DNA of 63,697 nt, the filler included, from Hyphochytrium catenoides (lineage: Eukaryota; Protista; Hyphochytriomycota): assembly GCA_900088475.1 (NCBI GenBank). It is 8 parts of 8 records of this genome, joined end to end, with 100 filler letters (N's around TTAATTAATTAA, not from the genome) between each part and the next. Parts side by side here need not be neighbours in the genome. Positions count along the whole stretch, not along the records: positions 29,970 to 37,220 come from FLMG01001085.1; 7 more parts are not named here. The stretch is one strand, 5' to 3'. A program made the translations under genes and the position numbers. Below the pieces are notes generated by a model. That model worked only from the letters and a program-made list of their open reading frames with translations, did no database searches and was not told where the DNA came from. Below are positions 29,970 through 37,220 of the stretch, piece by piece. How positions within the stretch are numbered: the stretch's first letter is position 1; every line of letters begins with the position of its first letter.

Positions 29970-31532
29970 GAGCAAGGGGCAAGGCGAGAGAGAAGAGAGA
30001 GCAGCCTGTCAGCTCAAGAACCTCTCATCCCCAAATGCAACCACCTCTTTGCCCTATCTGCAGCGCCCTTTCTCAGCCAAGAATATCAATGGTCTCTACT
30101 TCCCGCGTTTTCTCTCCTTCCTTCTACTATTCTTTAGTCTTCCGCTTGGCTACTGCTCTATAACAACGCGCACCTGGCCAATGTTAGAGACACCATAGAG
30201 GAAGGAGCCTGCCAGAGCGAGCATTGCCCCCTTCACTCTGTCCTGAGAGCCGCCACTCTTCTCAGAGAAGTTGTAAGCAACAACAGTGGCGATACCCGCA
30301 AGGGTGATGCCCGTTCCAATCGCATGGATTAGGTTGTACCTGATAATGAAAGACAGGGTTAGAACACGCAGTCAAGTTAGAGAGCCATCTCAGAAACTTC
30401 GACCATGACAAAAGCGAGGACAAGGAAGCAATCTGCCTGAACATCTTTAAAAAACAGAGAGAGCGAGAGTCAAGGTTGGGATGCCAGACCAGCGGGAGAG
30501 CAAGAAACTTTTTACGAAGAGGAGAGAGACGGATGTCCTACCTCCTCTTGAAGACGAAGTAGCTTAGTACAATAACCGTGGGGATCGTGAAGGTGTCAAT
30601 GAGACTGATGGTGGCGATATCAGCGTACTGATAGGCCTTCACCACCAAGAAATTGGCCTCCACATCCACCACCGCCAACATTGGATAGAGGTACCAACGG
30701 GACTAAGTAGGCGCGACGCAAAAGGAGAAGGATAGTTTGAGGAGGTTGACAAGGGCAAGAGGTAGGAGAGACGAGGCAGGGGCGAGAGTGGCCAACAAGG
30801 GCCGGGGTTGGGGAGGAGGGAGAAGATGGGAGGAGGGAGAAAGAGAGAAAGAGAGAAGAGTGAGTGCCCAAATGACGTGATGGTAGGCATAAGAGCAGAT
30901 ACAGAGTGGGACAGTTGGAATGGCGAGTCTCCGTAGTGCCATCACGGCCATACTTAAAGCGAAGAAGCTACCGTCTCTGAGGCCAGATGAACCAACAATC
31001 CTGCTGCTCTTCATTATCTTTGTCTCTCTCTTCCTCGATTGCCTGCCCCGCTTCTTCGAGCTAGTGATTTACCTTTACTCTGGTCCAGTCCTCGTTCGAT
31101 CGCCATCTGGGGATGAGAAACAAAGTGCAGAGCAGGTAGTTTGGCAAGCTCTGTAACATTGGGACATCCACCCCGTTCCGGCTCAGATACTGAGAAAAGA
31201 CTCCTGTCCCAGAGATTGCCAGGGAAATGGCCTAGATCATGTGAAGACGTGGAGCAGAAGCCACCAAACGACAAGGTTCAGTATCCTGTCCTCTTCAACG
31301 AGCTAGACTCTAGTTGTTCGCCTTCACTGCCAATCGCATATCTCACCTGTCCCAGGGCAATGGCGTAAAGCTTGGGGGCGAGGCCACCCTTGGCAGTGAT
31401 CTTGGTTTCCATGGTCAACGCTTTGTCGCCGTAAAGTGGCTTGAGATAACCTTCTTTGTTTCCAGAACGGAGTGAACCAAGAAGAGGAAGTTTTTCCTGC
31501 TCCGCGAGAGATTGTAGATTGAGTTCTGTCAT
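29970..31532 (-). CDS. SLC35F1/F2-like (DUF914) solute carrier, 3'-truncated by contig end; start at 31532 or 31412
   Basis: Spliced exons AIALGQ|AISLAISGTGVFSQYLSRNGVDVPMLQSLPNYLL..|SRWYLYPMLAVVDVEANFLVVKAYQYADIATISLIDTFTIPTVIVLS..|..GAMLALAGSFLYGVSNIGQ. DVEANFLVVKAYQY is the family signature. Confidence 0.88.
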
Positions 31533-31714
31533 GCAGGTAGTCACAGGCTGCCGCGTTTGCTTTCCTATCTGATAACAAGGAAGCTTCCTTCGCTTCTTGT
31601 CTGTTTCTTGAAGAGCGCTTGGCTCTTCTCTCTCGGTCCTGGTTGGGATTGGGTGGAAAGAGAAGCAGCTCAAACGTTGAGCTCAGCTGATGGAGAGGAG
31701 GAAGAGGAAGACAG

Positions 31715-31745
<31 letters not shown>

Positions 31746-31758
31746 CAAGAGAGAGAGC

Positions 31759-31793
<35 letters not shown>

Positions 31794-32027
31794 GGAGGAG
31801 CAGGGAAGTAGAGAAGGTGGCTAGGGGGCGGAAGGGTTCAAAGAAGGTGGTGAAGCACGTGTTCTTCTGGCACTTCCCGTCCCTTCTGGTACAAGGACTG
31901 GAAGGATCGTCTCGCTGTCAAAGCAAGCAAGTCCTTCAAGGGACGGGGGCTTTCGAGAGACAAGGGATGGTTAGAGGGACCGCACTATGACGTCTCACAC
32001 ACTGGTGGAGAGTATCTTCCTCTCTCT

Positions 32028-32081
<54 letters not shown>

Positions 32082-33017
32082 ATCTTCCTTTCTCTCCTCT
32101 CTCTCTGTTCTCCCTCTCTCTCTCTCTGTTCTCCCTCTCTCTCTCTCTGTTCTCCTTTTCTCTCTCTCTCTGTCTCTCTCTCTCTGAGCTTTCTCTCTCT
32201 CTCTCTCTCTCACTCACATTCAGGTCTCACTCTGTCCCTTCCCTTTCTCTGTCACCATTCTATTCTTCCTCGTTCCTCTTTCTGTCGAACTCTCTCACTG
32301 TACGAACCTTTCGTGCTACATAACTCTCTCTCGATTCCTCTCTGTCTCGTGTATGTCGTATCTCATCCGTTCTCTGTCTGTTCTCAGCGTCAGTCTGAGA
32401 ATTGACGGGTCTCACAACCACAACCAATGGTGTACACCTCACGAGGAATATCTCTAGGGTACAAACAGGCCGTTAGCGGGTCCCGTAAAAATATTTCTGG
32501 TACTTAGAATTATAAAAAGCGCAGAAACCCAAAACTTCATCCGGTCAAGGTTCAGGGCCATCACATTACTTCTAGAAGTATCCCCTTGCCTTTTTATTGC
32601 TTTGACTGGCGCTTACCAAAGTCAAAGGTAAACTATGTCGAATATAACAGCCAATTCCAGATAGAATTATTAGGTAGACCCTAAATAGACCCCTGCCGCC
32701 CTAAACCAAGTGATTCATGACGAATTCTAGATCTTTCCCACAGAATGTATGAGCATCTAGAACATAAAGTGTCTTTAGATCTTCCACAATCACCTGCGCA
32801 GGAAATGTATGAGAATTTAGAACAACAGCGTATCTTTCGAATTGTCTGACCAATCTATTACTACTGCTACTTTGTATTAGATGACATCTTCTTATAAGGA
32901 AAATTGGTGGATATTATTGCCGCTCGAAAGGACACAGCGCCCATCATCAGCCTTAGACTTGGAGGGAAGGAGGCGGCAAGCAGTGGACAACAGGACTCTC
33001 GCTGCTTCTGATCAGTT

Positions 33018-33070
<53 letters not shown>

Positions 33071-33186
33071 TTTGTTAAGTGATGCTCCTCCTCTCTTTGT
33101 TCTCTTTCTCTCTCCTCCCCTGTGTGTCTCTCTCTCCTCTTTGGCCTTTCACTCTTCGTTGTCTCTCTCTTCCCTTTCTCTTTCTT

Positions 33187-33224
<38 letters not shown>

Positions 33225-34285
33225 CCTGTGCCTTTCTCTCATTTGTCCCAACTCCCTTTATTTGACTCTCTCTATCAAGCCTATCACAAGCTCTTGACAT
33301 CCTGGCGAATTCTTTGACTCTGCCCTCTCTTCCAGTTCCCTATGACAGCTTCCTACTGTCTCTTGATACATCCAGCCCAGTCAAGCCAGAGAGTCCAGTC
33401 AGAGGAGGAGGAAGGAGGAAGGACGAGGAGAGGCTGAGTGTAGGAGACGGGAACACAGAAGGATCAGACAGAAAAGACAGAGAGTGTGATGCAACGAGAG
33501 AACAAGCCCAAGAGTAACATTAGGTTAAGGTAATAATAGACTAGCTACTCTTCTCCTCGCCTCTTCCCCACCCATCTTCTCTCTTTATTTCCTGATTTCA
33601 GCTGATGTATGGACCCTCAGAGCCTACGACCGAAGGGCGGGAAGCATGAAATTTAAACCGAGACAGCGACCAGACACTTGCAGCCAACAGTGATCATGTA
33701 AGGAGTTGTCCGTGAGACACAACGCGTGTTTGCCTAACTGCCAGAGATAATAAGGAGCCATCGAAAGGCTAGAAGGCGTGTGGTTGTCGAGATCATGTGG
33801 GTTTGAGGTGGGTGAGTAGATAAGGAGAGATAATGGTCAGATGTCAGATCATTCAGGAGGTCACGAGATAGATGGGGATGGAGGTAAGTTCGCCGTCTGA
33901 TTGGAAGAAGTGACCCTTCAGCGGTCTTCTGTTCGTCCCTTTTCCTCGATCCTGACCTTTCTTAAAGTTCTCTCCTTCTTCCGTCTCTCTATCTCCCTAT
34001 TCAATACTCCACCTTCCATTCGCTTTTATTTCATTTGTCCCCTCTTTTATCTCTTTCTCCTTCTTCTTTTTCCTTGTAGAGCTTGCCAACTGCCACAGGC
34101 TTCCCCCTTCGGCAGCGCCAGTCCCTCCGCCAAGGTGTAGGAGCCACAATCTCAAGCATCGAAAAGATGCTCCAGAGTATCCAGACGAATATTTGCTATT
34201 GAAAAGTCAAGAGAAACACTTTCAAACAAAAAAGATAAGCTAACGACAGACCAAGCGTTTAAGGACAGAGAAGAAGTATCTGGCT

Positions 34286-37220
34286 ATGGGACTCTTCTCC
34301 GTGCCCGCTCATTTGCTAGCGCCGGCCACCATGAACGCCATCGAAGCACTACTATTGCTCGTCATGGCCTTAGGAGTTATCCTTCGACTACTAAAACAAG
34401 TTACCTTCTTCCATTTCTTGCCGGTGGTGACAAGCTTGTTGAAGAAAGAGAGATTGGTAGTGTTCCTTCCTCTCCTTCAGAAGGATAAGGCCACTGCGTA
34501 CAACGCGATGATGCTTAGGGGTAAGTGCTTCTCTAGTCGGGTGATCGATGCCAAATGCTGATGTGCGCTGTGTATTGCTCTTGCTTCTCCCTGCCCTGCA
34601 GTCTATGCCGATGGTGGAGGAAGCCCGACGACCAAGAAGCAGACTGAAAAGGAAAGCGAAGTTGTTTACTCTCATGTTCTGGATATCATGAATTTGGCAC
34701 AAGCTGAAGTGCTTGGTCAGAACTATACAAATGCTAAGGCAAGTGCTAATGGTGACACTTAGGGAAAAGGAATAAATCGGGATGTAAATGCGACAAGGGT
34801 AGAGTAAGAGAGAGCAATGTCAACGACGGTGAATAGAGTCGAAGGGCTGTGGAGGAAGCGTTCAGAGATAAAGTTGCCTACCCTTACACCTCTCGGCACA
34901 GGGCTAATTTTGACTAGCTTGCTCACTGTTTTCTAGGCGCTCTATACCCAGGGCCTTGCAATCCTTGAGGTCAAGCTGTCACCCATTTGCTCATGGCTCT
35001 TGGAGGTGGAACTTCTAGCCAGAAGAGCGGACATCGAGGCAGCTCTTGGCGAATGGCAGGAGAGCCTTAGAGAATTTGAGTATGTAGCTTCGTCAAAGTG
35101 ATGTGAAGAAGCGAAAGAATCATGACGCCATAGAGAAGGCGGTTACCACGAAAGGGACAGTTAGTTGGATATTGTTCACTGGAGTTGACTTCGTCCTATT
35201 TTCGATTAAAATTATGTGACAGACTCGCGCTAGGAGCTCTTACGGCTGCGGAAAATGCGTTGGGAAAGCACGAGGGTCAGCTCATTAAGGACTTGAGGAA
35301 CGAACTCTTGGGAGCCTATCAGAACGTCACCCGAGACCAGGTTAAAGCAATCAAGGACGAGTTAAGAGAGGCTCAGCGGGAGGAGCAGAGACATCGCGAG
35401 CTTACCTCCTCCTTAGCGCAGCAGTCCCAAGGTTAGACTTGTTACACCCTCCATTCCCAACTTTTCTCCCTAGTGGGGAGGGATTCTTCCTTTCCTATCC
35501 CTCTTCCCAAATCCCTTTCTTTCATTGTTGCCCTTTTGCCTCGCTCTCCTACTTTACTTGTCCATTCTCCGTCTTTACTGGTCACCTTCTGCCCTCGGAG
35601 GCAGTAGTATCAAGCTTGCAAAGCTGTCTGAGGCTTGACCCTGTTAGCGCTGACGGCTGCATTGTTGGCCTCCATCTCCTCCGTGAGCTTCTGGAAGTTC
35701 ACGGGCACATCGTCCCTATCACGAGCCGTCCGAGTCAGGACGGCTTCTTTACCTGGTCAATAAAAAGAAAAGACCGGTATCAGGAACCGAACGAGAAAGA
35801 CACAGACAATGCTGCACCATCCAGAGCTTTCTGGAACTCTACGCTCATTGATAGCTAGTATTCTCGCGGCTGCGTTAGAGTTTGAGGAGAAGGAACCGGT
35901 TGGAGCTACCATCGTCGAGTTTCCAGACAGCTCTGGATGGTGCAGCTTTGTACCTGCCTTCCTCGTTCTGTACCGTGATACTGTCCGTCTTCTATACTGC
36001 CTAGGTAAAGAAGTCGTTTCCGCTCAGACGCCTCGGGAAGAGACGATGTGGCTAAGAAACTCTAAAAGCTCATGAATGCGATGGAGGCCGACAGACCAAC
36101 CCTCAGCGCCAACATGGCCAGGCTTCAGAAAGCTCTGGGAGGTCGATACGTCTTTCAGTCCGAACCCCATCATACGCGTGGAACCCTTACCACTCTCTTG
36201 CTTGTAGACGAACAAGCTGCATTCTTGCAAATAGCCAGTGAGAAAGATGAGCTTGCTAAACAGATCCATTTCCTGACTGCGGCCTTGGATACTGAGAAGG
36301 AAACCGTCAGAGCTACCACCGAAGAGCTCCAGACAGCTCTGGAAGGTGAAAGCCTTCAATTAGATACGTAGAGCATGGACACTGATCATTCCTCCATTTC
36401 TTCTTTGCAGCCAAAGACGCCCTGCTCGCGCAGACATCTAGCGACAGAGATCAATTAGCTTTGAAGCTTCATAGGCTTGAGGCCAAAATCGAGGTCGACA
36501 AAGCAGCAGTTAGAGCCAAAACGACGAAACTTCATGCAGCAATCCCAGGTCTCTACTACTCTCTTCGTGGCTGGACACATCCATCTGCTACGTATACTTA
36601 CCTTTTCTCACCACTCTGCAGCCAAAGACAATGCACTGTCACAATTGTCGTCTGAGAAAGAAAACGTAGCCTTGGAGTTGAAGAAGCTCATGGACGCCGC
36701 GGAGGCCAACCAAGCAGCCGCCAGCGCCAACATGGCCACGCTCCAAGAAGCTCTGGAAGGTTGATGCTACTTTCTCCAGGGCGGACCCATCAAACGACTG
36801 GAACGCTGACCGTTTTTTATTTCAGCCGAACAAGCTGCATTCTTGCAAATAGCCAGTGAAAAAGATGAGCTTGCTAAACAGATCCATTTGCTGACTGCGG
36901 CCTTGGATACTGAGAGAGAAACCGTCAGAGCTACCACCAAAGAGGTCCAGACAGCTCTGAGAGGTGAAAGCCTTGAATTAGATACGTATAGCATGGACAC
37001 TGATCATTCCACCATTTCTTTGCAGCCAAAGACGCCCTGCTCTCGCAGACATCTAGCGACAGAGATCAATTGGCTTTGAAGCTTCATAGGCTTGAGGCCA
37101 AAATCAAGGTTGACAAAGCGGCAGTTAAGGCCAGTACTGCGGAGCTTCATGCAGCACTCGCAGGTCTCTACTACTCTCTTCTTGGCTGGACACATCCATC
37201 TGCTGCTTGTGCTTACCTTT
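34286..37220 (+). CDS. Hydrophobic N-terminus + TPR-like region + modular 46-aa coiled-coil repeat protein; partly disrupted and 3'-truncated by contig end
   Basis: Exons 34286-34520, 34602-34738, 34937-35079 and 35223-35431 splice in frame and give NLAQAEVLGQNYTNAKALYTQGLAILEVKL. The 138-nt repeat exons follow. Confidence 0.7.
36005..37220 (+). repeat. Tandem exon-intron array: three 138-nt exon types (A,B,C) repeated with a ~617-bp period
   Basis: Exons 36005-36141 (137 nt, damaged), 36208-36345, 36411-36548, 36622-36759, 36826-36963 and 37026-37163, all AG/GT bounded and phase 1. Confidence 0.9.

What the first reader, a model, noticed from the sequence alone, without database searches (positions are those of the whole stretch)
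36005..37220. One-exon-one-module array: symmetric 138-nt exons in ABC-ABC order forming a potentially length-tunable TPR-tipped coiled coil
Seen: five consecutive exons are each exactly 138 nt (46 aa) and phase 1-1, separated by 62-73-nt introns; a sixth, the first, is 137 nt. The three divergent types share a frame (AxxxxxxQxxSxxxxxA...LxxAL) and recur every ~617 bp together with their introns, and the array runs off the contig. B1 and B2 differ at 7 codons, 6 non-synonymous, while their downstream introns are nearly identical. Because all exons are symmetric, any can be skipped, duplicated or swapped in frame. 46 residues is six heptads plus a 4-residue stutter. Established: exon-per-repeat LRR and TPR genes in Ectocarpus were proposed to diversify by exon shuffling. 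Inference: an analogous cassette system for a membrane-anchored TPR + coiled-coil stalk, which I do not recognise as described. This is the best candidate for a novel system in the window.
Basis: partly seen in the sequence, partly recalled or inferred. Interest (0 to 1): 0.78.

Follow-up and report, generated by a model that had tools for sequence, protein, structure and literature searches.

The report
Orphan helical-repeat gene, one exon per repeat
A eukaryotic gene fragment in which each 46-residue alpha-helical repeat has its own 138-base exon grew by ordinary tandem duplication of exon-plus-intron blocks; the repeat has no known relatives, and nothing here shows a new "cassette" system.

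Summary
The core observation holds. Five consecutive exons (B1, C1, A2, B2, C2; 36208-37163) are each exactly 138 nt, phase 1-1, with GT-AG introns of 62-73 nt, and the array is cut by the contig end. The sixth exon (A1, 137 nt) is not usable. It has a 1-nt deletion and an in-frame TAA, so it is a pseudo-exon. Upstream lie a truncated, frameshifted B remnant and an old inverted copy. Only B and C recur at 89-97% identity; the jump to high identity sits exactly at the B acceptor. So one recent 617-bp block duplication is visible, not a proven ABC-ABC array. Differences between the three types follow codon position (2<1<3), so the exons evolved as coding sequence. Each module is predicted as one unbroken helix with a heptad-like hydrophobic stripe. 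A module profile found no relative among 1.84 billion representative proteins, in Pfam, in the PDB or in metagenome contigs. The TPR label rests on one sub-threshold hit. The link to the upstream membrane-anchor exons is a model only. Combinatorial skipping or swapping is allowed by the exon phases but untested. Best reading: a lineage-restricted helical-repeat gene expanded by exon duplication, a known kind of architecture.

The parts
34286..34522 (+). putative exon 1: ATG, then a hydrophobic stretch (possible signal anchor), ending in phase 1 before GTAAGT
   Evidence: ORF and splice motif read from the sequence. No Pfam family. Model only.
34602..34738 (+). putative exon 2 (137 nt, phase 1 to 0), with a GC donor AAG|GCAAGT
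   Evidence: This is the only junction that keeps the frame into exon 3. No Pfam hit.
34937..35097 (+). putative exon 3, helical, with a weak TPR-like stretch
   Evidence: Pfam TPR_2 E=0.046, 14.3 bits against a cut-off of 27. Frame.
35223..35431 (+). putative exon 4, charged and helical, ending in phase 1 (CAA G|GT). It could join any phase-1 module exon.
   Evidence: It does not match the module profile (2.4 bits).
35597..35836 (-). old inverted copy of [end of a B exon + intron + A exon]. The A-type module at 35613-35756 on the minus strand is open, but its donor GT has become CT.
   Evidence: Inverted repeats I1-I3, 70-73% complementary. Alignment. 31.8 bits to the module profile.
35845..35938 (+). 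B0: the 3' part of a B-type exon. It is truncated at the inversion junction and frameshifted by one extra T before the CAGACAGCTCTGG motif.
   Evidence: Direct repeat families D4 and D5. Frames.
36005..36141 (+). A1 pseudo-exon, 137 nt: a 1-nt deletion near 36039 and an in-frame TAA at 36063
   Evidence: Only its 3' half matches the profile (21.5 bits).
36208..36345 (+). module exon B1, 138 nt, phase 1-1
   Evidence: 85 bits to the profile.
36411..36548 (+). module exon C1, 138 nt, phase 1-1
36622..36759 (+). module exon A2, 138 nt, phase 1-1
   Evidence: Predicted as one helix, residues 2-44, pLDDT 95.
36826..36963 (+). module exon B2, 138 nt, phase 1-1, 93% identical to B1
37026..37163 (+). 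module exon C2, 138 nt, phase 1-1, 89% identical to C1
37164..37220 (+). start of the intron after C2, 91% identical to the intron after C1, cut by the end of the piece

Best explanation
This is the 5' part of a lineage-restricted eukaryotic gene for a long alpha-helical repeat protein, probably a coiled coil. Each 46-residue module is encoded by its own 138-nt phase 1-1 exon.

The array grew in layers by tandem duplication of exon-plus-intron units. First, a unit of about 204 bp gave the three old types A, B and C, which are 27-40% identical as protein. Later, a three-unit block of about 617 bp was duplicated, with a breakpoint at the B acceptor. That produced B1-C1-A2 | B2-C2-..., 89-97% identical.

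The proximal edge holds debris of older events: a truncated B0, a broken A1 and an inverted copy. If the gene is expressed, this debris most likely lies inside a long intron between a phase-1 donor at 35431 and the B1 acceptor.

Shown: the exon anatomy, the duplication layers, the coding-type substitution pattern, the helical prediction and the lack of relatives. Inferred: the link to the upstream membrane-anchor exons, coiled-coil pairing, present-day expression, and copy-number change by unequal recombination.
For: - Five 138-nt exons with GT-AG borders, phase 1-1.
- Spacing of 615-618 nt.
- Identity between the two periods jumps to 0.9 or more at about 36200.
- Differences between the types at codon positions 1/2/3 are 18-22, 13-16 and 25-32 of 45. 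The exons align across types (z 4.2-6.5). Two of the three intron pairs barely align (z 1.7).
- The module is predicted as one helix, pLDDT 95.
- One heptad class is 77% hydrophobic and its partner 37%. Power at period 3.5 beats shuffles, p 0.006-0.04.
- A1 carries two separate lesions relative to its inverted copy.
- The exon 4 donor is in phase 1.
- No relatives were found, although the modules themselves score 73-85 bits against the profile.
Against: - There is no transcript evidence.
- The recent copies give no proof of present constraint. dN/dS is 0.54 from 8 synonymous and 15 non-synonymous changes. Under neutral change, 23 random substitutions leave all four exons stop-free 40% of the time.
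- The proposed 776-nt intron is 4 to 10 times longer than the others.
- The upstream exons have no homologues and need a GC-AG intron.
- Hydrophobic occupancy of the second core position is weak in the distal half of each module, so a canonical coiled coil is not assured.
Confidence: 0.65

Rival explanations
1. Decaying pseudogene. The array was once coding but is now a dead relic next to an unrelated small membrane-protein gene. The intact look of the five exons reflects only the youth of the last duplication.
For: - A1 is broken twice, B0 is truncated and frameshifted, and an inverted copy has lost its donor.
- dN/dS of the recent pairs is 0.87 for B and 0.42 for C, not separable from 1.
- The neutral chance of staying stop-free is 0.40.
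- No homologue exists anywhere.
- Exon divergence is about equal to intron divergence.
Against: - A2, B and C kept the exact length, the frame and the GT-AG borders through about 45-50% nucleotide divergence, while the neighbouring copies decayed.
- There are no indels in 276 aligned exon positions, against one in 122 intron positions.
- The codon-position pattern is that of coding sequence.
Confidence: 0.2
2. The symmetric exons are skipped, duplicated or swapped in a regulated or combinatorial way to tune the length or surface of a membrane-anchored stalk. This would be analogous to the exon shuffling proposed for the LRR and TPR receptor genes of Ectocarpus.
For: - All module exons are phase 1-1 and of equal length, so any subset stays in frame.
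- Inverted and inactivated exon copies lie beside the array, as described for Ectocarpus ROCO genes (PMC3341825).
- A patch of clustered changes lies in the second half of exon C.
Against: - No transcripts are available, no second locus is in view, and there is no mosaic pattern of exon exchange.
- Only one recent block duplication is visible.
- dN/dS is below 1.
- The modules are not LRR or TPR, and no NB-ARC, ROC-COR or other signalling domain appears in the visible exons.
- The phase symmetry follows from duplicating one exon and needs no further explanation.
Confidence: 0.1
3. Assembly artefact. The second period is a mis-joined allele or a collapsed repeat, not a true tandem copy.
For: The contig ends inside the repeat, which is typical of assemblies that break in repeats.
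Against: - The two periods are separated by the distinct A2 unit.
- They differ by 6-11% with a 3-nt intron indel.
- They sit in one continuous sequence with consistent splice phases.
Confidence: 0.05

Closest known systems
Exon-per-repeat LRR (72-nt exons) and TPR genes of Ectocarpus: ROCO and NB-ARC-TPR candidate receptors (PMC3341825)
   Same: - One repeat per exon.
- Equal-length exons that keep the frame.
- Inactivated and reverse-oriented exon copies in or beside the array.
   Different: - The modules here are 46-residue single helices with no LRR or TPR match.
- No NB-ARC or ROC-COR domain is in view.
- The introns are 62-73 nt.
- No multi-locus family or exon exchange could be shown.
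- There is no signal of positive selection.
Super-repeat exon blocks in giant filament genes: nebulin 35-residue modules in 7-module super-repeats, and titin (from established knowledge, not tested here)
   Same: - Helical or modular repeats.
- Symmetric exons.
- Blocks of several exons duplicated in tandem, giving a higher-order period. Here the block is three modules: 138 residues of coding sequence and about 617 bp of DNA.
   Different: No sequence relation. The organism is an unknown microbial-type eukaryote with very short introns, and the repeat length is 46 residues.
Intragenic tandem repeats of fungal cell-surface genes that change length by recombination (established knowledge, not tested here)
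   Same: Near-identical in-frame tandem units would allow copy-number change by unequal recombination.
   Different: Here the repeat unit carries introns, the protein is helical rather than Ser/Thr-rich, and no population data exist.
Generic long coiled-coil proteins: the nearest named ESM Atlas clusters are AKAP9 coil, TACC and CDK5RAP2 coil, all scoring below 0.9
   Same: Ala/Leu/Glu/Lys-rich composition, a continuous helix and a heptad-like stripe.
   Different: No alignment-based relation. These hits are leads only.

Membership tests
Tandem exon-duplication array (symmetric-phase, exon-per-repeat) | Consecutive exons of equal length that is a multiple of three | tested here: met
   Five exons of 138 nt. 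The sixth is 137 nt and broken.
Tandem exon-duplication array (symmetric-phase, exon-per-repeat) | The same intron phase on both sides of each exon | tested here: met
   Phase 1-1 for all five. Junction codons read GCC.
Tandem exon-duplication array (symmetric-phase, exon-per-repeat) | The exons are homologous to each other, and the introns were duplicated along with them | tested here: met
   Exon types align with z 4.2-6.5. Introns C and A align with z 5.1. The recent copies are 89-97% identical including their introns.
Ectocarpus-type exon shuffling in receptor genes | The repeat is an LRR or a TPR | tested here: not met
   No LRR or TPR hit in any module. Each module is a single 43-residue helix.
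Ectocarpus-type exon shuffling in receptor genes | Exons exchanged among several paralogous loci | not testable with these tools
   Only this 7.25-kb piece of the genome is available. Nothing was found in the metagenome contigs.
Ectocarpus-type exon shuffling in receptor genes | Positive selection on the repeat exons | tested here: inconclusive
   Pooled dN/dS is 0.54 from 23 changes.
TPR protein | Match to a TPR profile above the curated cut-off | tested here: not met
   TPR_2 at 14.3 bits against 27, E=0.046, in putative exon 3 only. A motif split across exons 2 and 3 could not be tested because the joined sequence was left out.
Coiled coil | A continuous alpha-helix | tested here: met
   AlphaFold2 predicts helix for residues 2-44, pLDDT 95. 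Within the five modules the only proline is the last residue of C1, and there is no glycine. The junction residue is Ala.
Coiled coil | Heptad a/d hydrophobic pattern | tested here: inconclusive
   One heptad class is 77% hydrophobic and the partner class only 37%. Periods of 3.5 and 3.6 cannot be told apart. 46 = 6x7+4 implies a register shift at each module.
Coiled coil | Oligomerisation | not testable with these tools
   This needs the joined protein or an experiment.

The most novel reading that the evidence does not exclude
The array continues well beyond the contig end as a copy-number-variable locus. Its symmetric 138-nt exons would be combinatorially included, setting the length of a membrane-anchored helical stalk. 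That would make it a new orphan family with a splicing- or recombination-tuned ruler.
Probability: 0.07. Interest if true: 0.6.

Novelty: new member of a known kind. Interest (0 to 1): 0.25.

Why it matters
If the gene is expressed, it is a clean small example of how a repeat protein is built by layered exon-plus-intron duplication. The failed copies, one of them inverted, are still visible at the edge of the array. The module family has no relatives in very large protein collections. It does not open a long-standing question, and the architecture itself is textbook. Its main value is for annotating this genome: it marks a likely repeat-caused assembly break and a gene model that automatic callers will probably get wrong.

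Tried and rejected
- Pfam on the five modules and four upstream exons gave nothing above threshold.
- A profile of the five modules against 1.84 billion representative proteins gave one hit, E 1.2e-4. It is a TPR-like-repeat protein (no family scan was run on it) that matches a short LEAALQ-like stretch. I judged it chance.
- The same profile against PDB sequences gave nothing below E 0.16.
- Metagenome contigs held nothing, by degenerate peptide pattern or by an exact 26-mer of exon B.
- The ESM Atlas gave only generic helical or coiled-coil neighbours below 0.9 for a module, and unnamed clusters for exon 4.
- Rfam and tRNA scans of the piece found nothing.
- The bacterial promoter and terminator scan is irrelevant to a eukaryote and was empty.
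- Literature searches for a 46-residue coiled-coil repeat found nothing relevant.
- I rejected the idea that A1 is a single sequencing error. It carries two independent lesions relative to its inverted copy.
- I rejected exon 4 as a hidden module. It scores 2.4 bits against the profile.
All searches were made exon by exon, by reference.
- The word-index protein search was not used. Its length window excludes full-length relatives of single exons, and the exhaustive profile search had already covered the question of absence.
- The organism could not be identified with the collections at hand. The contig is not human-like.

Full report
**What is in the sequence**

The piece 29970-37220 is eukaryotic. 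It has about 50% G+C, (AG)n and (CT)n microsatellites, and short GT-AG introns.

From 36208 to 37163 there are five consecutive open segments of exactly 138 nt:
- B1 36208-36345
- C1 36411-36548
- A2 36622-36759
- B2 36826-36963
- C2 37026-37163

Each follows a pyrimidine tract plus AG, is followed by GT, and is open in phase 1-1. The split codons at the junctions read GCC (Ala). The introns between them are 65, 73, 66 and 62 nt. The intron after C2 is cut by the end of the piece at 37220.

**What is not as described**

The first exon, A1 (36005-36141, 137 nt), cannot be translated. Read from its acceptor it stops at TGA 36073. Read back from its donor it stops at TAA 36063.

An old inverted copy of the same segment lies at 35597-35836 on the minus strand (arms 70-73% complementary). 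Aligned to that copy, A1 shows a 1-nt deletion near 36039. The TAA aligns to CAG in the inverted copy and to AAG in A2. These are two independent lesions, so A1 is a pseudo-exon rather than one base-calling slip.

Just upstream, 35845-35938 is the 3' part of a B-type exon. It is truncated where the inverted arm begins and is frameshifted by an extra T. The inverted A-type copy is still open, but its donor GT has become CT.

A module profile finds copies in the piece only at these places: B1, C1, A2, B2 and C2 at 73-85 bits, the 3' half of A1 at 21.5 bits, and the inverted copy at 31.8 bits.

**Layers of duplication**

Windowed identity between the two periods is 0.47-0.82 over A1/A2 and the intron that follows. 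It rises to 0.90-0.97 from about 36200, exactly at the B acceptor, and stays high to the end of the piece. One dip to 0.75-0.80 falls in the second half of exon C.

The recent event is therefore a duplication of a block of about 617 bp that starts at B, giving B1-C1-A2 | B2-C2-.... A1 belongs to an older layer.

The three types are 27-40% identical as protein and 51-56% as DNA without gaps. The exons align across types with z 4.2-6.5. Introns C and A also align (z 5.1), while the other two intron pairs barely do (z 1.7). So the original unit was one exon plus its intron, about 204 bp.

**Is it coding?**

Between the types, differences fall at codon positions 1/2/3 as 18-22, 13-16 and 25-32 of 45. 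That is the pattern of protein-coding evolution. A2, B and C also kept their length, frame and splice borders through roughly half of their bases changing, while the neighbouring copies decayed.

The recent copies say little:
- B1/B2 differ at 6 internal codons (5 non-synonymous) plus the junction codon.
- C1/C2 differ at 12 codons (8 non-synonymous).
- Pooled Nei-Gojobori dN/dS is 0.54, from 8 synonymous and 15 non-synonymous changes.
- A simulation shows that 23 random substitutions would leave all four exons stop-free 40% of the time.

**What the module is**

With the five-module alignment, AlphaFold2 predicts one unbroken helix over residues 2-44, mean pLDDT 95.

The composition is 20% Ala, 15% Leu, 11% Glu and 10% Lys. 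One heptad class is 77% hydrophobic and its partner 37%. Power at period 3.5 exceeds shuffles (p 0.006-0.04 per module), but period 3.6 does as well. After splicing, the junction residue is Ala. The only proline is the last residue of C1.

A long continuous amphipathic helix, probably a coiled coil with a register shift every 46 residues (6x7+4), is the most likely form. Pairing was not tested.

**Relatives**

None were found:
- Pfam gave nothing for any module.
- The module profile, searched with HMMER against 1.84 billion representative proteins, gave one hit at E 1.2e-4. It is a TPR-like-repeat protein (no family scan was run on it) that matches a short LEAALQ-like stretch, which I take as chance.
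- The control shows the search had power. The window's own modules would score E 1e-15 to 1e-19 at that library size. A single module as diverged as the inverted copy would miss the cut (E 0.011).
- PDB sequences, metagenome contigs searched by two approaches, and the ESM Atlas added nothing beyond generic coiled-coil neighbours.

**Upstream gene model**

A plausible model is:
- exon 1, 34286-34522: ATG and a hydrophobic stretch
- exon 2, 34602-34738: GC donor AAG|GCAAGT
- exon 3, 34937-35097
- exon 4, 35223-35431

Exon 4 ends in phase 1, so it could join B1 across a 776-nt intron that holds the decayed copies.

None of these exons has a family match. The only TPR signal is TPR_2 at E 0.046, below the cut-off. 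'Membrane-anchored' and 'TPR-tipped' are therefore unverified.

All tests were made exon by exon.

**Comparison with what is known**

Equal-length symmetric exons, one per repeat, multiplied in tandem, are the classical signature of exon duplication. Block duplication giving a higher-order period is known from nebulin and titin (established knowledge).

The Ectocarpus ROCO and NB-ARC-TPR genes share the one-repeat-per-exon layout. Notably, they also have inactivated and reverse-oriented exon copies within the array (PMC3341825). The modules here are not LRR or TPR, no signalling domain is visible, and no exchange among loci can be shown.

**Verdict**

This is a real exon-per-module array of an orphan helical repeat, made by ordinary tandem duplication, with a decayed 5' edge and an unknown 3' extent. 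The cassette or length-tuning idea is permitted by the anatomy but has no support yet. A decaying pseudogene remains a serious rival.

Noticed in passing
window 30150-31532, minus strand: A neighbouring multi-exon gene of the SLC35F solute-carrier family. One exon (30538-30681) matches Pfam PF06027 at E 6.8e-16.
   Followed up: partly
window 31718-31797, 32020-32215, 33017-33225: Long (AG)n and (CT)n microsatellites, 80 to about 210 nt, fill the intergenic space between the two genes.
   Followed up: no
window 34738-34740: A probable GC-AG intron (AAG|GCAAGT). It is the only junction that keeps exons 2 and 3 of the upstream model in frame.
   Followed up: partly
window 36496-36535 vs 37111-37150: Identity between C1 and C2 drops locally to 75-80%, and most of their non-synonymous differences cluster here. 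This could be a conversion patch, relaxed constraint or selection; the changes are too few to tell.
   Followed up: partly
window 32430-32900: An AT-richer stretch (about 41-45% G+C) holding two similar 22-nt motifs (GAATGTATGAGCATCTAGAACA-like) about 70 nt apart. Its origin is unknown.
   Followed up: no
window 35597-36149: A palindrome-like arrangement: an inverted copy, an 84-nt spacer, then the direct copy, centred near 35878. This suggests an old fold-back rearrangement at the edge of the array.
   Followed up: partly
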